A stretch of DNA of 64,000 bases, taken from positions 62,001 to 126,000 of the IMG/VR virus record IMGVR_UViG_3300038463_000730. One strand, written 5' to 3'. The position numbers and the translations under genes were made by a program. This document shows, in pieces, positions 26,711-53,337 of this stretch. Position 1 is the stretch's first letter. Every line of letters starts with the position of its first letter. A model generated the notes under the pieces. The model made no database searches and had not been told where the DNA came from. It saw only the letters and a program-made list of their open reading frames with translations.

Positions 26711-27087
26711 CGACGGAGTCCCATTTTCTGCAACCGAGTTAAAGCGCTTCTTAGCTCAGGAAGCACTTCTTCTATCTGAGTCTGCGTATCCTTCTCGTGC
26801 TTTGCGGCAAGAATAGCGTTGTGCAGGTTTGTAAAATCAGAGTAACGCAGCCCAGAAAAGATAATTTTCTCTTCGAGTAAAGATAGAGGGAGTTTGATAC
26901 TTTGATGTGAAGCGTTGATAAATCCTTCAAAAAATTCCGGATCAATATCTTCACAATCGAGGAAGTCCAATTCTATAACGCTATGGTTTGCAATGTCTTC
27001 GTAGACACAGATAAACAGATCTCGGCCCTGTTGTTCAGTCGTCAGGGTTTTGGCAATTTTACGCGCGACCTCAAAATGATACGCCAT
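26707..27087 (-). CDS. STAS-like (DUF4325-type) domain protein
   Basis: LTTEQQGRDLF...VIELDFLDCEDIDPEFFEGFI...KIIFSGL. Confidence 0.55.
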   Translation of the reverse strand: MAYHFEVARKIAKTLTTEQQGRDLFICVYEDIANHSVIELDFLDCEDIDPEFFEGFINASHQSIKLPLSLLEEKIIFSGLRYSDFTNLHNAILAAKHEKDTQTQIEEVLPELRSALTRLQKMGLRR

Positions 27088-27089
27088 GA

Positions 27090-27914
27090 TCAGAACTTAA
27101 GTTCTCGTCCGATCGTATCGTCATTGCGTAAAGTCATGATTTCGACGTGGTCTTCGTGAATCATAATGGTATGCTCGAAGTGCGCCCCGATATCATCCGT
27201 CGTGATCGTCCAACCATCCCGGCCTACATGCGTTCGTGGAACACCGGCTGTCAGCATCGGCTCGATAGCCAGCGTCATCCCGGTTTGCATCACGACACCC
27301 TCTTCGATCCCGGCACGATTCGGAACGAACGGTGCAGCGTGTGGCTTATTCTCCTCCAGGCCATGTCCGCCGTATTCCGTAATGACTCCGAATCCGGCAT
27401 CACGAGCGTATCGGTAAATTGCGTTCCCAATCACGCCAATACGACGTCCAGGAGCTACCATCTGTATTCCTGCATAAAGCGAAAGACGAGCCACGGAAAC
27501 AAGCTTCCTTTCTTCTTCTTTCCTCGGTTGTCCGAAGATAGCCGTACAAGCAGAGTCAGCAATCGCCGCCATGAAGGTCGCCCCAAGATCGAATTTAACG
27601 ACGTCTCCCTCTTGAAGCCTATAATCTTTAGGAATCCCATGTACAATCTCCTTGTTAATAGAAATACAAACGGCTTCAGGAAAGCCTTTGTAGTTCTTAA
27701 AGGTAGGTGTACACTTGTTATCTAGGATGATCTGCTCAGCCTCACGACTGAGTTCGAGCATCGTTTTAGTTGTTCCGGACTCAACTCGTTTCAAAAGATG
27801 AGTCAAGGTATCGGCTACGACTTTTCCGGCGTGACGTTGATTCTGGATCCAATCCGCCCCTTTCAAAACGATAAGTGATGATTGGGGCGTTCGTGATTGG
27901 CTTACGACTTTCAT
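27090..27914 (-). CDS. map: type I methionine aminopeptidase
   Basis: CISINKEIVHGIP, KFDLGA...ADSA, YGGHG, AIEPM, AHFEHT: all metal ligands present. Confidence 0.95.
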   Translation of the reverse strand: MKVVSQSRTPQSSLIVLKGADWIQNQRHAGKVVADTLTHLLKRVESGTTKTMLELSREAEQIILDNKCTPTFKNYKGFPEAVCISINKEIVHGIPKDYRLQEGDVVKFDLGATFMAAIADSACTAIFGQPRKEEERKLVSVARLSLYAGIQMVAPGRRIGVIGNAIYRYARDAGFGVITEYGGHGLEENKPHAAPFVPNRAGIEEGVVMQTGMTLAIEPMLTAGVPRTHVGRDGWTITTDDIGAHFEHTIMIHEDHVEIMTLRNDDTIGRELKF

Positions 27915-30788: not shown

Positions 30789-30815
30789 AAAAACAAAAAG
30801 CCCGCATAAGCGGGC
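30789..30815 (-). terminator. rho-independent terminator
   Basis: Minus strand GCCCGC-TTAT-GCGGGC followed by TTTTTGTTTTT, 4 nt after the stop of 30820..31164. Confidence 0.85.
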
Positions 30816-30819
30816 CGGT

Positions 30820-31571: not shown

Positions 31572-34072
31572 TACCCGCATTTACTATAGCCGCAATTGAC
31601 ACACTTCAGGCATCCCTCCTGATAGATAATTGCGTCCTTCTGACAAGTCGGACAAACCTTGTCCGATGCGGACTTCGTCCCATCCGTAATGTACGATTTC
31701 AGGACTCGTCCCATGACTCGCGAGAAGCTGGTCATGTCGGAAAACTTGTCCTTCTGGAGTTGCTCCATAACGAATTGTGGCGGGCAACCATGACGAAGAG
31801 CCAGCGAAATGGTTCGCGTAAAAGCTCCGTAGTTAGCATTCTCGAAAACGCTCGCAATGTTCTTGATAACCATCTCGTCGTCATCTTGACCTACCACCAA
31901 GTTGTAGGATGTCACTCCATCAACCTTGCCATTCTTCACAATTCTACCGTGTTTGTACTTGTTCGGGATATCGACATACTTCGACAACCCTCCGAATACC
32001 TCGTACGGTCGTCCGTTCAGCATCCCGACAAAAATGGTCCAACCTTCGCCCTGTACTTTTGCCTTCTTGATATCGCAAGGAAGCTCGACCGGGCGTTTCG
32101 GAGCCATCATGATTTCGACATCGGTGGGCCTGATCATCGGATCTCGGGCTTGCTGTTTCTTGTGCTGATCTTCGCTGACCAATACACCGGAGCGACAACC
32201 ATCACGGTAAACTGTAAAGCCTTTGCATCCCTGCTCCCACGCCATCATGTAAACGTCCTTGACAACATCTACAGTCGTGTCAGCCGGAAGATTACATGTC
32301 TTCGAGATCGAGTGACAAATCCACTTTTGCGCCGCTCCCTGAAGTTTGGCCGAGGCAACCCAATCGATCTCGTTCGACGTCGCTCCGTAATAGGGTGATT
32401 TCGAAATATCGGTCTCACCTGTCACGTCCATCCACTGTTTCACTCCGGGATGGTAAACAGTAAACTCCTGCCACGAATCACCCATCGCATCAACGAAGTC
32501 CGTTCTGGCATTCTTGTCGTTCGGATTGATCTTCTTCCGACGAACATACGACAGAAGATACGGCGGTTCAATTCCGGAGGTTGTTTGGGTCAATGTACTG
32601 ACCGACCCAGCCGGAGCGGTCGTGGTCAGGGCGATATTCCGACGTCCATTCTTCTTGTAAAGCTCATAGACCTCCGGTGCAGCATCCCAAATACGCTGAA
32701 GGAACGGGTGGTCCTTTTCCAAAGCATGATCAAAGATCGGGAATGCTCCACGCTCGCCAGCCAGGATACACGTCGAACGATACGCATTGACCGCCAATCC
32801 CTTGTAAATCTCTTCTGTAACCCGGATCGACTCATCGGAGCCATAACGGATGCCGAGGGCTGCTAGGGCGTCTCCAAGCGCCGTAATGCCTAATCCTGTG
32901 CGTCTACCGCTCAAGCAGGCCTTCTTGATACGTTCCCAGAGTTCAACCTCCAGACGTTTGATATTGGCAGGCTCGGGATCTGCATGGATCTTGGCCAGAA
33001 TCCGATCGACACATTCGGTTTCCAAATCAATAATATCATCCATCAATCGTTGAGCCTGAACAACCACTTCACCGTACTTCTTGTAATCGAAACTTGCTTT
33101 GTCAGTAAACGGATGTTTCACGAACCCCATTAAATTAACCAGCAATAGACGACACGAGTCATCTGGTGAAAGAATAATCTCTCCGCACGGATTCGTGCTC
33201 GTGCTGCGGAAGCCGAAGTCCTTGTAGATATCGGCAGGGCTGTACTTCTCGGCTGTGGACCAGAACAAGATTCCGGGCTCGGCCGAGGCATGCGCGCATT
33301 CGATCAATTGATCCCAAACTTCACGGGCACGCACTTTTTTCGAAACCAATGGATCAGAAGAATCGACTGGCCAACGTTGTTCGTATTCCTGATCGTCTTT
33401 AACTGCCTGCATAAATTCATCCGAGACACGAACCGACACGTTCGCTCCGGTGACTTTCTTCTTGTTCTGTTTGATCTTGATGAATGTTAAGATCTCAGGA
33501 TGGTGAATCGAAATGGTCAGCATCAACGCGCCACGACGACCGTTCTGAGCGACCTCGCGACATGTAGCACTGTACCGTTCCATAAAGATACCGATGCCAT
33601 CGGTTGTCTTCGCGGCATTCTTGGTCGGAAGCCCTTTCGGGCGAATATTCGACAGGTCGAAACCGACTCCTCCACGACGTCGCATGATATGAGCTTGCTC
33701 TTGATCCGTTTGCATGATCCCGGCATAGCTATCAAGCGGTGAGTTCAGCACGAAACAGTTCGAGATCGACATAATCTGATACGGATTACCAATCCCGGCC
33801 ATAGGAGATCCCTGCGGCACAACATAGCGGAAATCCTTGAGTAGATCGTAGATCGCCTGCTTTGATAACGGATTGGCATAGTTCGACTCGATGCGATGGA
33901 ATTCACTCGCTAGACGCCAATGCATATCGTCCGGAGTCAATTCGTCATAGACGCCATCTTCCGCAGTCAATGCGTACTTATCAGGAAACAACTTTGCGGC
34001 GAATTCATCGCCTCCAAAGTAGGTTAGTGAGGCATCTAGGACTTGTTGATAATTGTATTTTGATTTTGTCAT
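31571..34072 (-). CDS. nrdJ: class II (adenosylcobalamin-dependent) ribonucleotide reductase
   Basis: SNCFV, GGVG, TNPCGEI, RRTGLG, TTAPAGS, SISKTCN, KGFTVYRDGCR; C-terminal TSCPD-like region and CPTC..EGCLKCVNCGYSKCG; no beta-subunit gene nearby. Confidence 0.92.
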   Translation of the reverse strand: MTKSKYNYQQVLDASLTYFGGDEFAAKLFPDKYALTAEDGVYDELTPDDMHWRLASEFHRIESNYANPLSKQAIYDLLKDFRYVVPQGSPMAGIGNPYQIMSISNCFVLNSPLDSYAGIMQTDQEQAHIMRRRGGVGFDLSNIRPKGLPTKNAAKTTDGIGIFMERYSATCREVAQNGRRGALMLTISIHHPEILTFIKIKQNKKKVTGANVSVRVSDEFMQAVKDDQEYEQRWPVDSSDPLVSKKVRAREVWDQLIECAHASAEPGILFWSTAEKYSPADIYKDFGFRSTSTNPCGEIILSPDDSCRLLLVNLMGFVKHPFTDKASFDYKKYGEVVVQAQRLMDDIIDLETECVDRILAKIHADPEPANIKRLEVELWERIKKACLSGRRTGLGITALGDALAALGIRYGSDESIRVTEEIYKGLAVNAYRSTCILAGERGAFPIFDHALEKDHPFLQRIWDAAPEVYELYKKNGRRNIALTTTAPAGSVSTLTQTTSGIEPPYLLSYVRRKKINPNDKNARTDFVDAMGDSWQEFTVYHPGVKQWMDVTGETDISKSPYYGATSNEIDWVASAKLQGAAQKWICHSISKTCNLPADTTVDVVKDVYMMAWEQGCKGFTVYRDGCRSGVLVSEDQHKKQQARDPMIRPTDVEIMMAPKRPVELPCDIKKAKVQGEGWTIFVGMLNGRPYEVFGGLSKYVDIPNKYKHGRIVKNGKVDGVTSYNLVVGQDDDEMVIKNIASVFENANYGAFTRTISLALRHGCPPQFVMEQLQKDKFSDMTSFSRVMGRVLKSYITDGTKSASDKVCPTCQKDAIIYQEGCLKCVNCGYSKCG

Positions 34073-34156
34073 TCTGAACCTTTAGATAAGAACTATCCCG
34101 TCACGACACGAGGTAGTATCGAGTAAGTTAGTGCCAATACACTGAGCGTTAGCTAG

Positions 34157-34780
34157 TTATAGTTTGATATTCTCCCGGATAACGCCAAGTGCCGAGTTGA
34201 TCGTCTTCATGCACGATGGCCGGGAGAGATTCTTACGTTTGCAGATCTTGTTTATCGACAAGGGCTTGTCCCCTGTAAAACCGAAAGCGAGTGACACGAC
34301 CTCGCGCTGATCTGTACTGAGATCCTTCATGGCGATCTCGACTGCCCGCTTGAGTTGGTCGTCCTCCAAGATTACATCCGGATTGAAACGCGGCTCGATC
34401 ATAATCGGCATAGTCGATTCTTTATGAGGAGGAGTATTCTTCGCGAACTTCAAAGGATACCGAATTGTTGTATGTAGATTAGCTGACCGACTAATCCTCG
34501 TGTCAATATATTTGTGGACCCACCAAAAGAAATTACCTTTGTTGGGATTGTAATTATTCATCGCTTTCAACAACGCCTCATAACCCTCCTGCATTAAGTC
34601 TTCGTGATTACTGAAACCTTTGTACTTGTTCGTACGCATCGTAACGAGGTACCGGAACTTCTCCATACATAGTGTTTCTAGCCTTTGTAGCTCAAATTTG
34701 CATTTTGGGTCTGACTTCGCTTTTTTTCTGAGTCGAACAAACTCAGACATTAATTGTTGGGCTTCCTGATGTGATATCAT
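34157..34780 (-). CDS. sigma-70-family RNA polymerase sigma factor
   Basis: Region 2 EDLMQEGYEALLKAMNNYNPNKG.F.WW; region 4 LSTDQREVVSLAFG...HTH. Confidence 0.9.
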   Translation of the reverse strand: MISHQEAQQLMSEFVRLRKKAKSDPKCKFELQRLETLCMEKFRYLVTMRTNKYKGFSNHEDLMQEGYEALLKAMNNYNPNKGNFFWWVHKYIDTRISRSANLHTTIRYPLKFAKNTPPHKESTMPIMIEPRFNPDVILEDDQLKRAVEIAMKDLSTDQREVVSLAFGFTGDKPLSINKICKRKNLSRPSCMKTINSALGVIRENIKL

Positions 34781-34799
34781 ATTTTCCTATCGTGAAATA

Positions 34800-34989
34800 T
34801 TGACACTAGAAATGCAAAAACTGCCAGACGGTTAAGCGTGGTGGCAGAATTAGATTGCACCATATGTTCGATATCCCGCGTTTGCGGGCTTATCGTCATT
34901 ATGCCAACTTTCTTGATAAACTTCATCTAATGTCAACGTGTATCTCTTTGTAACGTATAGTTAATAGCTCAATATTCCTATACTGCACG
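34800..34989 (-). ncRNA. candidate structured RNA (five-way junction plus abutting hairpin) upstream of the sigma factor
   Basis: 11-bp closing stem 34800-34810/34926-34936 enclosing four nearly abutting helices; the irregular pairs read as G-U on the minus strand; family not recognised. Confidence 0.55.
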
Positions 34990-35023
34990 ATACTTCCGCG
35001 ACACTTCCGTAACAGGCCCAAAA

Positions 35024-35185
35024 CTACTTGTTTATAAGCTTTTCAGAGCGTTTCGACTCCTCGTCTTCGAGGTTGTCGATGACTTGTTCGATGGTCGATT
35101 TGATGAGTTCGACATCATCCAGAGAAAGCAAAAACTTCAATACTTTGATCGAGCGCTTCAGTCCTTGTTTGGTGTCTCCGGCCAT
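35024..35185 (-). CDS. small hypothetical protein (53 aa, not in ORF track)
   Basis: MAGDTKQGLKRSIKVLKFLLSLDDVELIKSTIEQVIDNLEDEESKRSEKLINK*, starting 2 nt after the upstream stop. Confidence 0.65.
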   Translation of the reverse strand: MAGDTKQGLKRSIKVLKFLLSLDDVELIKSTIEQVIDNLEDEESKRSEKLINK

Positions 35186-35187
35186 GG

Positions 35188-35475
35188 CTATTTACCGTAG
35201 TTGTCCCGGGCCCAGCCACCGCCCACTAGCTGAAAAGATGTCTTACTGATTAGTCTGTCTGGCTTGGCAAAAACGGGCGAACCTAGCTCATGTTGCGTGC
35301 AATAGATGCAGTACGTAATCCCCTCTTCGTGGATAAATACGGCTTTGCAAGCCTCACACGTGTACTCCAACTTCTTTTCCTCGATACACTGAGGACAATT
35401 GATCATCCGTTCGTTCATCTTATGAACGGCTTCGAACACACCGTGTTCCTTACAAGAGTACTCGTATATCGGCAT
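35188..35475 (-). CDS. FmdB-family zinc-ribbon protein with an extra Zn ribbon
   Basis: MPIYEYSCKEHG.FE...CPQC...CEAC..CIYC...RLISKTSFQLVGGGW. Confidence 0.85.
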   Translation of the reverse strand: MPIYEYSCKEHGVFEAVHKMNERMINCPQCIEEKKLEYTCEACKAVFIHEEGITYCIYCTQHELGSPVFAKPDRLISKTSFQLVGGGWARDNYGK

Positions 35476-35501
35476 CAAACCTCTACTAATAGTCCTAAGT
35501 A

Positions 35502-35792
35502 TTAGTCCCTGCTGGTAACATTTTTGTTGTAGCGTTCTTCGCCAACCAAGTTGGCCCGATAGTTCACATCAGTGTTCATTCGGTGCTTCATATCTCGGAC
35601 GTCAGCCTTAACCTTGTTTTTGAGGTCTTGACCAGTAAGCTCAACAATACCCCGCCCGCTACCACCCGAAATAAGCCTCTGTGCCTCGGATCCACACGTC
35701 GGACAAACTGGTACAGGCGCCGTAATAGAATAGAAATCTTCAAACTCGTGGTTACATTCTTCATTCTTACATTTGTGTTCATAACTGGGCAT
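35502..35792 (-). CDS. FmdB-family zinc-ribbon protein
   Basis: MPSYEHKCKNEECNHEFE...CPTCGS..QRLIS. Confidence 0.85.
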   Translation of the reverse strand: MPSYEHKCKNEECNHEFEDFYSITAPVPVCPTCGSEAQRLISGGSGRGIVELTGQDLKNKVKADVRDMKHRMNTDVNYRANLVGEERYNKNVTSRD

Positions 35793-50627: not shown

Positions 50628-51454
50628 ACTGCACCCCATTTAATGTGAAGATTGGCATCCCAAACTAGTTTGTCTGCCCATTTCTTTGTGAAGATCTGGC
50701 GTGCCTTCGTATACAAAGAAGCTGTATCGAGCGCCTTACTTGTCATCTTGCCGAAATGGGTGACCGGCACAGGAACAGTAGACATCGCTATTCCAGCGCT
50801 CATGGCTCGCATAGACAGGTCGGTGTCCTCAAAGTAAGCAAGGCCGAACTCACTAGAGAACGGCCCTTCATCACCAGGCAGGACCAACTTGTCGAAGACC
50901 TTCTTCGAACCTACCAAACACCAGCCAGACAAGTAGTCTACCAACGTGCCATCACCAAACACTCCGTCCTCTCGAACGAAGTTCAGAGCGGGGTTGAGGT
51001 GACCTACGGTTGGTCCGGCCAGTTCCCCTCGCATCGCTGCCTGAAACAGCGGCACGGTCCAGTTGTGGTGGTCCGAGCGAACTCGAATATCATTGTTTAG
51101 GAACAGGACATTCGGAGCTGAAGCCAACTTGTAGCCGCGATTGCATGCTTGAGCAAAACCGCGGTTCTCCGGAAGCCGGTGGTAGACAGGAGGATTGGCT
51201 GTCGCGATGAGCTTCAATTGACCAAGTTGGTCGTTGTTTATTTCTCGCCGATCTCGTCTATAACAAGCTTCCTCGTATTCACTCATCAAATCTTGATGAA
51301 ACGATGTCAGCTTCTCTTGCGTCTCGTCCGTGCTTCCGTTGTCCACGACAATGATTTCGTTGTCGGAACCAAGCCGGACAAGATCACGGAGGCAATCGCG
51401 AGTGAAATTGTATTTGTTCCAAACCGGAATGACGATGCTTAGGTTAAAATCCAT
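50624..51454 (-). CDS. GT2-family glycosyltransferase
   Basis: SIVIPVWN, VVDNGSTD, NRGFAQACN, FLNND, YFEDTDLS. Confidence 0.92.
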   Translation of the reverse strand: MDFNLSIVIPVWNKYNFTRDCLRDLVRLGSDNEIIVVDNGSTDETQEKLTSFHQDLMSEYEEACYRRDRREINNDQLGQLKLIATANPPVYHRLPENRGFAQACNRGYKLASAPNVLFLNNDIRVRSDHHNWTVPLFQAAMRGELAGPTVGHLNPALNFVREDGVFGDGTLVDYLSGWCLVGSKKVFDKLVLPGDEGPFSSEFGLAYFEDTDLSMRAMSAGIAMSTVPVPVTHFGKMTSKALDTASLYTKARQIFTKKWADKLVWDANLHIKWGAV

Positions 51455-51496
51455 AACCCGTCATGAACGAACGAGTGCCCGTATCGTCACGAACGA

Positions 51497-52606: not shown

Positions 52607-53302
52607 TCAGGTCCACATCGTTCCTCGAACTTTGATCAAACGAATCAACATTTCATCTTCCATGTTCTTCATCTGATCACGCGCCTGTGACCAATCCTGA
52701 ACGAGCTTATGTCGCTCCTGAGATGTCGTAGCTTTCTCGCTCAAGTCGAACAAGCCATCGACACGATCCTCTTCGGTATGACGATCTAGTGTCCACCATC
52801 GATACAACGCCATAACCTCATCATAGGCGTCTTGTTGAGACCGAGCACCCATCGCATCGATCTCTTCCTCCGTGTGGTATTCACGAAGACTCGATGGTTT
52901 CTCTTTCTCTACGAAATCTCGCAGAATGGCAAAGTTCGCCAAAAGCATCCGGCCATCCGAGTCAATCCATCCGAATCGATAAGAATGTCGGGATGATTTA
53001 GTTTCACGGATATCGACGATGTGAAATTTGTAAGAGGGCAACGTGTGACACTGGACCCAATACCAAACGCGACCCATTCGATAGCCAATGCGACGAATCG
53101 GTCGGAATAATTTCGGAAGTGTTTTATTGAAGAACCATCGCACTGGAAATCGAACACGAACTTCTTTTTCCCAGTCTTCCCAACAGTACTCACTCGGGCT
53201 GATGAACGGATCAAAGTCTCGCATCTGCAACGCATTGCTATCGTGGCCAAGTGCTTTCGGCAACGGGAGCGCGAAATGTTTCTTAAAGAACCGAGACAGC
53301 AT
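52607..53302 (-). CDS. hypothetical protein
   Basis: 231-aa Trp-rich ORF. Confidence 0.7.
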   Translation of the reverse strand: MLSRFFKKHFALPLPKALGHDSNALQMRDFDPFISPSEYCWEDWEKEVRVRFPVRWFFNKTLPKLFRPIRRIGYRMGRVWYWVQCHTLPSYKFHIVDIRETKSSRHSYRFGWIDSDGRMLLANFAILRDFVEKEKPSSLREYHTEEEIDAMGARSQQDAYDEVMALYRWWTLDRHTEEDRVDGLFDLSEKATTSQERHKLVQDWSQARDQMKNMEDEMLIRLIKVRGTMWT

Positions 53303-53337
53303 AAAAGCTAACCGAGACTAAAACGGTCGTATCGTCA

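What the first reader, a model, noticed from the sequence alone, without database searches (positions are those of the whole stretch)
34800..34989. Unrecognised multi-helix RNA in the leader of the phage sigma factor
The longest non-coding gap outside the 1725-2063 remnant folds on the minus strand. The closing stem is UUGACAUUAGA/UCUAGUGUCAA (34936-34926/34810-34800). It encloses UUUAUC/GAUAAG, CCCGC-AAAC-GCGGG, AUAU-CGAAC-AUAU and a long arm GUGCAA/UUGCAU plus CUGCCA/UGGCAG plus ACG/CGU, joined by linkers of 0-1 nt. A further hairpin (CGUG/CACG, GUAUAG/CUAUAC, AAUA/UAUU) abuts it at 34937-34989. The irregular pairs are G-U on the minus strand but A-C on the plus strand, as expected for a selected RNA. 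It ends 19 nt before the sigma ATG. Inference: a new riboswitch or leader timing the sigma-nrdJ operon, or a stand-alone small RNA.
Basis: partly seen in the sequence, partly recalled or inferred. Interest (0 to 1): 0.75.

Follow-up and report, generated by a model that had tools for sequence, protein, structure and literature searches.

The report
Phage sigma-gene leader with probable attenuator
The 243-base gap in front of a giant phage's sigma-factor gene is a conserved control region that most likely combines a start signal used elsewhere in this genome, a tiny leader reading frame and a terminator-like hairpin, not a new riboswitch, and this rests on only two informative sequences.

Summary
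As one closed multi-helix RNA they are only weakly supported. The hand-picked 137-nt core folds with z = -3.45, the whole gap with z = -2.0. An 11-bp closing stem turns up in 36% of shuffles. In the only informative relative (L003), 7 of 15 changed pairs are broken.

The gap is nevertheless under selection. It is 81% identical to L003, while 56% of four-fold sites in sigma differ. About 100 other relatives have a ~90-nt gap with a different, near-invariant motif.

The 5' part of the proposed RNA contains TGACGATA followed after 27 nt by ATG. That geometry occurs 9 times in this genome (about 0.8 expected), mostly at starts of real genes that lack a Shine-Dalgarno.

In the leader it opens a 28-codon ORF. 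The ORF runs through a conserved terminator-like hairpin plus U tract (34847-34810) and stops on the sigma ATG.

The only other sigma leader with TGACGATA (L056) is also the only other one with a terminator spanned by a short ORF.

Best reading, at confidence 0.4: promoter-like start signal, leader ORF and attenuator. There is no Rfam match and no RNA data.

The parts
35024..35185 (-). Upstream 53-aa ORF, conserved across the phage family. It marks the 5' border of the gap.
   Evidence: (tblastn in 102 loci).
34937..34989 (-). Block A. About 87% identical to L003. It contains a degenerate copy (34980-34971) of the family motif TATCAATAAT.
   Evidence: Alignments. PWM score 2.1 bits, rank 133 in the genome. 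Pairs broken in L003 and the CGUG arm deleted.
34926..34936 (-). It starts with a conserved GTTGACA. It is also the TTG start of a possible first uORF (34936-34850).
   Evidence: 3 of 4 changed pairs kept, one two-sided. Helix length within chance. uORF1 frame kept in L003.
34889..34920 (-). Block B. 30 of 32 positions identical to L003. It contains TGACGATA.
   Evidence: The UUUAUC/GAUAAG stem is unstable alone.
34891..34898 (-). TGACGATA, the genome's start-site signal, followed after exactly 27 nt by the ATG at 34863.
   Evidence: 4 matches of TGACGATA-N27/28-ATG in the window against 0.17 expected. 9 in the genome, reversed control 0. 12 of 25 sites touch the 8.4% non-coding DNA, P = 2e-7. 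Conserved in L003, with GTG then ATG after N27.
34875..34888 (-). P3 hairpin, CCCGC-AAAC-GCGGG.
   Evidence: L003 has CUUC-AAAA-GAAG. Two two-sided compensatory changes and one broken outer pair.
34777..34863 (-). Leader ORF of 28 codons. It starts at the signal's ATG, has no Shine-Dalgarno, runs through the hairpin and U tract, and its TGA overlaps the sigma ATG (ATGA).
   Evidence: In L003 the frame opens at the same place but stops in the hairpin loop after 17 codons. In L056 a 14-codon ORF likewise spans the terminator.
34821..34847 (-). P5, the terminator-like hairpin (CUGCCA..ACG..CGU..UGGCAG), -9.2 kcal/mol.
   Evidence: L003 keeps a hairpin (-11.4 kcal/mol) with a different inner sequence, 39 against 40 nt from the ATG. 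One two-sided change and one broken pair in the outer stem.
34810..34820 (-). U tract UUUUUGCAUUU directly after P5.
   Evidence: Conserved in L003. P4 changes G-U to A-U.
34800..34810 (-). 3' arm of P1. It overlaps the best genomic remnant of the family motif (GTGTCAATATTTCACGATA, 34806-34788).
   Evidence: PWM 9.2 bits; only 14 sites in the genome score as high.
34785..34788 (-). Shine-Dalgarno AGGA of sigma.
   Evidence: AGGAA and AAGGA are the most enriched 5-mers upstream of starts in this genome.
34157..34780 (-). Sigma-70 family gene, 207 aa.
   Evidence: Pfam Sigma70_r2 and phrog_351. 719 homologues.

Best explanation
The gap is the lineage-specific control region of the phage sigma gene.

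Proposed layout:
- A promoter-like start-site signal, TGACGATA at 34898-34891, is used at fixed geometry by at least five other genes of this phage. It sets the start at or just before the ATG at 34863.
- That ATG opens a 28-codon leader ORF.
- The ORF is read straight through a terminator-like hairpin and U tract (34847-34810).
- The ORF ends on the sigma start codon.

Inferred mechanism:
- A ribosome following the polymerase through the leader ORF keeps the hairpin from forming. Transcription and translation then run on into sigma and the ribonucleotide reductase gene.
- Without that ribosome, a short RNA ends at about 34815.

Shown: the signal and its geometry, the ORF, conservation of the hairpin, and selection on the gap.

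Inferred: the RNA start, termination at the hairpin, and the coupling.
For: Selection on the gap:
- It is 81% identical to L003.
- 4-fold sites in sigma differ at 56% and 2-fold sites at 37%.

The start-site signal:
- TGACGATA-N27/28-ATG occurs 4 times in the window against 0.17 expected.
- It occurs 9 times in the genome, with 0 for the reversed control.
- The ATGs at 27087, 51454 and 53302 open ORFs of 126, 276 and 231 aa without a Shine-Dalgarno. The Pfam GT2 domain starts at residue 6 of the 276-aa ORF.
- The leader's ATG at 34863 has exactly this geometry. L003 has GTG-ATG at the same place.

The hairpin:
- The hairpin plus U tract is kept in L003 at the same distance from the sigma ATG, although its inner sequence has changed.
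- Among 82 distinct sigma leaders only window, L003 and L056 carry TGACGATA. The same three are the only ones with a terminator-like hairpin.
- In all three a short ORF spans the hairpin.

Other:
- The ORF stop and the sigma start overlap as ATGA.
- The phage uses canonical intrinsic terminators, for example 30816-30799.
Against: - No transcript data. No RNA run holds the locus, so the RNA start and end are unknown.
- The hairpin is weak, and hairpins passing my filter occur at 0.65 per kb even in coding DNA.
- The leader peptide is not conserved. In L003 it stops inside the hairpin loop, so the ATGA coupling is not conserved.
- The -10 region of the TGACGATA sites is not conserved (my reading), so 'promoter' is only one reading of the signal.
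- P3 keeps pairing through two compensatory changes, yet would lie upstream of a leaderless RNA start.
- Only two independent lineages carry the architecture.
Confidence: 0.4

Rival explanations
1. One closed multi-helix RNA (34936-34800, plus the hairpin at 34937-34989) in the sigma 5' UTR acts as a riboswitch or protein-binding leader.
For: - Core z = -3.45.
- L003 folds with the same closing stem, z = -2.47.
- P1 keeps 3 of 4 changed pairs, including G-C to A-U. P3 has two compensatory changes.
- alifold z = -2.8.
- A second long-range helix, block B with block C, reaches the Shine-Dalgarno region. It lies only 4 kcal/mol above P1 in both sequences, as a switch would need.
Against: - No Rfam hit.
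- A stem as long as P1 occurs in 36% of shuffles.
- Block B to block C pairing is matched by 32 of 1000 shuffles and is far from the best genome-wide partner.
- The AUAU and upstream hairpins are broken in L003.
- The centre is about 45% identical with 18-nt and 5-nt indels.
- The 5' arm and block B coincide with a start-site signal that probably lies upstream of the RNA start.
Confidence: 0.12
2. A stand-alone short RNA. The TGACGATA signal drives a transcript of about 50-80 nt that ends at the terminator. This would resemble lambda 6S RNA from pR' to tR'. Sigma would then be expressed only by read-through, using a phage antiterminator or a changed polymerase, or from its own weak promoter in block C.
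For: - Signal followed by hairpin and U tract in window, L003 and L056.
- Conservation pattern typical of small RNA genes: conserved ends and variable stems with kept pairing.
- Block C holds the best remnant of the family's sigma-specific motif.
Against: - No RNA evidence.
- Only 40 nt lie between the U tract and the ATG.
- No sigma-70-type promoter in the gap.
- No antiterminator gene was identified.
- No significant trans target.
Confidence: 0.15
3. Mostly a relic. The extra ~150 nt is a decayed copy of a gene junction (end of one gene, intergenic signal, first codons of the next). It was left by duplication or recombination. Only its promoter signal is functional and the hairpins are incidental.
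For: - About 100 relatives have only ~90 nt here.
- Window 34916-34830 resembles the junction at G000:47708-47794: nhmmer E = 0.069, a shared 15-mer, and matching peptide ends FKKLGIM and M.SNSAT in the same order.
- Tandem Zn-ribbon genes lie just upstream.
- The centre evolves at about the neutral rate.
Against: - The E-value is borderline, and the hit vanishes with the two-sequence profile.
- Blocks A, B and C are about 87-94% identical at a divergence where silent sites are near saturation.
- The hairpin position and U tract are kept.
- L056 carries the same architecture without sequence similarity.
Confidence: 0.18
4. A DNA-level operator array. The repeated TnTCAA-type boxes (34980, 34936 inverted, 34918, 34805) descend from the family motif TATCAATAAT. 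They would bind a regulator, and the closing stem is just two inverted boxes.
For: - The family motif is near-invariant, lies ~50 nt before sigma and occurs about once per genome.
- The window boxes score 6-11 bits.
- The P1 arms contain TTGACA and TGTCAA.
Against: - The boxes are weak; 41 to 242 sites in the genome score as well on the 10-nt box.
- L003 has lost 2 nt inside the best box.
- This does not explain the compensatory changes in P1, P3 and P5.
Confidence: 0.08

Closest known systems
Translation-coupled transcription attenuators such as the E. coli pyrBI leader (from my own knowledge)
   Same: A short leader ORF reads through an intrinsic terminator that lies just upstream of the regulated gene. 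A ribosome on the ORF would prevent the terminator hairpin from forming.
   Different: No regulatory codons or pause-site logic are evident. The leader may be leaderless and signal-defined. The peptide and its stop position are not conserved. Termination is untested.
Lambda late-gene control: pR' - 6S RNA - tR' with Q antitermination, and nut sites (boxA plus boxB hairpin) (from my own knowledge)
   Same: A phage promoter is followed closely by a terminator in front of the gene set that drives the next stage. A conserved linear box (TGACGATA) is followed 2 nt later by a small A-loop hairpin whose stem covaries.
   Different: No Q- or N-like gene was identified. TGACGATA also precedes at least five ordinary genes at a fixed 35 nt from their ATG. 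That fits a start signal better than a nut site.
Promoter-stem-loop cassettes (PeSLs) of T4-type phages (from my own knowledge, not checked in the library)
   Same: A repeated intergenic module of promoter signal plus stem-loop lies at gene junctions. There is possible homology between the leader and another junction of the same genome.
   Different: The repeats here are short signals, not long near-identical cassettes. blastn and nhmmer find no second copy of the element.
   Same: Position in a 5' leader, with alternative long-range pairings of similar energy.
   Different: No Rfam match at any threshold. No conserved multi-helix core. The lineage is restricted to two sequences.

Membership tests
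Known riboswitch or other Rfam family | Covariance-model match at or near the gathering score | tested here: not met
   0 hits at gathering over the whole window. At E up to 10 on 34700-35100 only two chance-level hits, SNORD24 (16.6 bits against 41) and Rev13. No tRNA or tmRNA.
Structured cis-regulatory RNA in general | Structure conserved with covariation across homologues | tested here: inconclusive
   Only one informative homologue. 8 of 15 changed pairs kept, 4 of them two-sided. alifold z = -2.8, SCI not significant.
Intrinsic terminator or attenuator | G+C-containing hairpin directly followed by a U tract | tested here: met
   34847-34821 (-9.2 kcal/mol) followed by UUUUUGCAUUU. L003 has -11.4 kcal/mol followed by GCUUUUGCAUUUUU. 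The simple scanner missed it because of its 15-nt interrupted loop.
Intrinsic terminator or attenuator | Lies between the transcription start and the regulated gene | not testable with these tools
   The start is inferred from the TGACGATA-N27-ATG geometry only. No RNA run holds the locus.
Intrinsic terminator or attenuator | Leader ORF or alternative pairing that can prevent the terminator | tested here: met
   ORF 34863-34777 spans the hairpin. The L003 ORF ends in its loop and the L056 ORF spans its terminator. No convincing antiterminator helix was found; only UGGCA/UGCCA, 5 bp, from reading the sequence.
Intrinsic terminator or attenuator | Termination actually occurs and is regulated | not testable with these tools
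   Needs in vitro transcription or 3'-end mapping.
Small protein gene (49-aa ORF 34926-34777) | ORF and start conserved in relatives | tested here: not met
   In L003 the ATG is AAG and the frame is interrupted. No homologues by tblastx.
MITE or other mobile insertion | Terminal inverted repeats together with several copies in the genome | tested here: not met
   11-bp inverted ends are present, but there is no second copy in the 434,688-bp genome or in 125 related loci. No clear target duplication.
Sigma-70-type promoter | TTGACA-N16-18-TATAAT-like pair | tested here: not met
   No site on the sense strand in 33900-35600. The TTGACA at 34936 has no -10 at 16-18 nt, from reading the sequence.

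The most novel reading that the evidence does not exclude
TGACGATA-N27-ATG and CGATATAT-N7-9-ATG are a previously undescribed pair of promoter elements of an uncultivated ~435-kb peat phage, and they start leaderless mRNAs. The sigma gene is gated by a self-contained timing device. The signal makes a short RNA that terminates unless a ribosome on the leader ORF, or a phage antiterminator, carries the polymerase through. This would be a megaphage analogue of lambda Q/tR' control. It arose twice in the sigma-gene family, replacing the otherwise near-invariant TATCAATAAT element.
Probability: 0.15. Interest if true: 0.6.

Novelty: new variant of a known kind. Interest (0 to 1): 0.35.

Why it matters
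Sigma factors of huge phages presumably switch the infection programme, yet nothing is known about how their own expression is timed.

If the reading is right, this lineage swapped the family's usual upstream element for a start signal, a leader ORF and a terminator. That would give a testable handle on gene timing in uncultivated megaphages.

The two fixed-distance start signals would also help to annotate gene starts and transcription units in this genome. Gene callers currently misplace the sigma start.

If it is only a relic plus an ordinary promoter, the finding is routine.

Tried and rejected
- Rfam at gathering and at E up to 10 gave nothing. ARAGORN gave nothing.
- The phage GenBank collection had no match by blastn.
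- Pattern scan of IMG/VR with block B: 0 hits.
- More members of the lineage:
  - The sigma search gave one relative at 91% and then nothing above 70%.
  - Cluster mates P0124, L128 and L129 and the JGI loci L126 and L127 are identical to the window.
  - The 53-aa ORF search gave only itself and the 69% lineage.
- Sequencing runs: only peat DNA runs hold the locus, and no RNA run is shown to hold it. Laying four partial holders gave identical low-depth pieces and no variants.
- A second copy in the genome or related loci: none.
- Coding homology of the gap by tblastx: none beyond L003.
- The 49-aa ORF was rejected.
- uORF1 (TTG 34936 to TAA 34850, stop 2 nt before the hairpin, frame kept by an in-frame 18-nt indel in L003) was kept only as a weak option.
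  - dN/dS is about 1 by my count.
  - Its Shine-Dalgarno is weak.
- Block B as a small-RNA seed against the sigma ribosome-binding site: not exceptional.
- Hairpins inside the N27 spacer as a class feature: not significant, P = 0.2.
- TGACGATA-N27-ATG in three related genomes: absent.
- Homology of blocks to the nearest outgroups L005 and L006: within shuffle range.
- Literature: two searches found nothing on leaders of phage sigma genes.

Full report
**Setting**

The window is bases 62001-126000 of a 434,688-bp virus record from peat metagenomes.

On the minus strand a tight gene array runs through two Zn-ribbon genes and a 53-aa ORF (35185-35024). A 243-nt gap follows (35023-34781). Then come a sigma-70 family gene (34780-34157) and a class II-like ribonucleotide reductase gene (34072-31571).

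**Checking the observation**

- The 137-nt core folds to -42.1 kcal/mol, z = -3.45. Its ends were picked to fit the stem.
- The full gap gives z = -2.0 on the sense strand and -1.84 on the antisense strand.
- A contiguous helix of 11 or more pairs appears in 362 of 1000 shuffles of the gap, so the closing stem alone is not remarkable.
- UUUAUC/GAUAAG is not stable by itself.
- Rfam finds nothing, at gathering scores or at E up to 10. There is no tRNA or tmRNA.

**Relatives**

The sigma protein has 719 homologues, many on contigs of 350-480 kb. I fetched about 125 loci.

- In 102 of them the 53-aa ORF precedes sigma. The gap is about 90 nt in nearly all, and 243 and 240 nt only in the window and in L003, whose sigma is 91% identical.
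- Most relatives carry a near-invariant motif, gTATCAATAAT-N3-GTAT, about 50 nt before the sigma ATG.
- That motif occurs about once per genome.
- It is absent from this genome. Weak remnants remain at 34806-34788 (9.2 bits, rank 14 in the genome) and at 34980-34971.
- So this lineage replaced the usual upstream element with about 150 extra bases.
- All other loci of the lineage proved identical to the window. The comparison therefore rests on L003 alone.

**Selection**

Between the window and L003, 56% of four-fold sites and 37% of two-fold sites in sigma differ. The gap is nevertheless 81% identical. By my count on the alignments:

- Block A (34989-34937) is about 87% identical.
- Block B (34920-34889) is 94% identical.
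- The last 40 nt are about 85-90% identical.
- The centre (34888-34861) is 45% identical, and the loops carry indels of 18 and 5 nt.

The region is functional, but its core is not conserved like an aptamer.

**Structure test**

Changes from the window to L003:

| Helix | Outcome |
|---|---|
| P1 | 3 of 4 changed pairs kept, including G-C to A-U |
| P3 | 2 two-sided changes kept, 1 pair broken |
| P4 | G-U becomes A-U |
| P5 outer stem | A-U becomes G-C; one pair broken |
| AUAU hairpin | 2 of 3 changed pairs broken |
| Hairpin at 34937-34989 | 2 pairs broken, and one arm deleted |

Overall, 8 changed pairs are kept and 7 are broken.

RNAalifold on the MAFFT pair gives z = -2.8 and an unremarkable SCI. 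My structure-guided alignment gives z = -7.2 but is biased.

RNAalifold prefers a different closure: block B paired with the 20 nt before the Shine-Dalgarno. That closure is only 4 kcal/mol above P1 in both sequences and is not exceptional against shuffles.

**What the 5' part is**

A k-mer census of upstream regions of the genome showed two enriched signals.

*TGACGATA*
- 12 of its 25 copies touch the 8.4% of the genome that is non-coding, P = 2e-7.
- 9 copies are followed after 27-28 nt by ATG; the reversed control gives 0.
- In the window there are 4 such matches against 0.17 expected.
- At 27087, 51454 and 53302 that ATG opens ORFs of 126, 276 and 231 aa without a Shine-Dalgarno. In two cases the signal sits right after the previous stop codon.

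*CGATATAT-N7-9-ATG* behaves alike, with 11 places against a control of 1.

The leader's block B contains TGACGATA (34898-34891), and exactly 27 nt later lies ATG 34863. L003 has GTG-ATG at the same spot.

The geometry fits a promoter-like element with the RNA starting at or near the ATG. That is an inference, because the -10 region of these sites is not conserved.

**The leader ORF and the hairpin**

- ATG 34863 opens a 28-codon ORF.
- The ORF passes through the hairpin at 34847-34821 (-9.2 kcal/mol) and the U tract at 34820-34810.
- Its TGA overlaps the sigma ATG.
- L003 keeps a hairpin (-11.4 kcal/mol, different inner sequence) and a U tract 39 nt before its ATG. Its ORF stops in the hairpin loop.
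- Of 82 distinct sigma leaders, only window, L003 and L056 (with its twin L053) have a terminator-like hairpin. Only these three contain TGACGATA.
- In L056 a 14-codon ORF spans a clean terminator and ends 9 nt before sigma.
- Caveat: hairpins that pass my filter occur at 1.5 per kb in intergenic DNA and 0.65 per kb in coding DNA.
- The phage does use canonical terminators.

**Interpretation**

The most likely reading is start signal, then leader ORF across a terminator, then sigma. This is a translation-coupled attenuator or coupling device, at confidence 0.4.

The rivals are:
- a short terminated RNA that needs antitermination;
- a relic of a gene junction, given the similarity to G000:47708-47794 at E = 0.069;
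- an operator array.

The 49-aa ORF is spurious. There is no second copy of the element, so it is not a MITE. No RNA data exist.

Noticed in passing
window 27085-27123, 51452-51489, 53300-53337 (minus strand); six more places in G000: TGACGATA-N27/28-ATG is a fixed-distance start signal in front of genes that lack a Shine-Dalgarno. There are 9 places in the genome (reversed control 0), often directly after the previous stop codon. It may mark leaderless mRNAs.
   Followed up: partly
G000, e.g. 16171, 168121, 291079, 348081, 348714, 401103: CGATATAT(A/G)-N7-9-ATG is a second fixed-distance signal, with 11 places against 1 for the reversed control. It looks like a -10-type element placed so that the RNA would start at the ATG.
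   Followed up: partly
L004-L125, about 50 nt before the sigma ATG: The motif gTATCAATAAT-N3-GTAT is near-invariant in 71 distinct relatives down to 55% sigma identity. It occurs about once per 350-450-kb genome. It is a sigma-gene-specific cis element of unknown role.
   Followed up: partly
L056 1430-1500 (twin L053/L137): An independent lineage has TGACGATA, a 14-codon ORF and a clean terminator (CGCGGG-CTAT-CCCGCG-TTTTTT) 23 nt before sigma. It lacks the family motif.
   Followed up: yes
G000:47708-47794, outside the window (L130 1208-1294): A gene junction resembles the centre of the leader. They share the 15-mer TCTAATTCTGCCACC, with nhmmer E = 0.069. This is a possible source of the extra 150 nt.
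   Followed up: partly
L003 1157-3555: The relative's ribonucleotide reductase carries an intein with an HNH domain (1289 aa against 833 aa in the window).
   Followed up: no
window 34780 / 34750 / 34411: Public gene calls start sigma at internal ATGs (197 aa in Logan, 84 aa in JGI). Residues 1-10 are conserved across the family, so the 207-aa start is the real one.
   Followed up: partly
G000 about 51,090-51,120 and 416,540-416,580: The repeat GGGGGATATTAGGGGGAGGGATT lies next to a palindromic TGACGATATCGTCA at two places 365 kb apart.
   Followed up: no
window 30799-30816 (minus strand): A canonical intrinsic terminator (GGCCCGC-TTAT-GCGGGCT followed by TTTTTGTTTTT) lies downstream of the sigma and reductase genes.
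   Followed up: no
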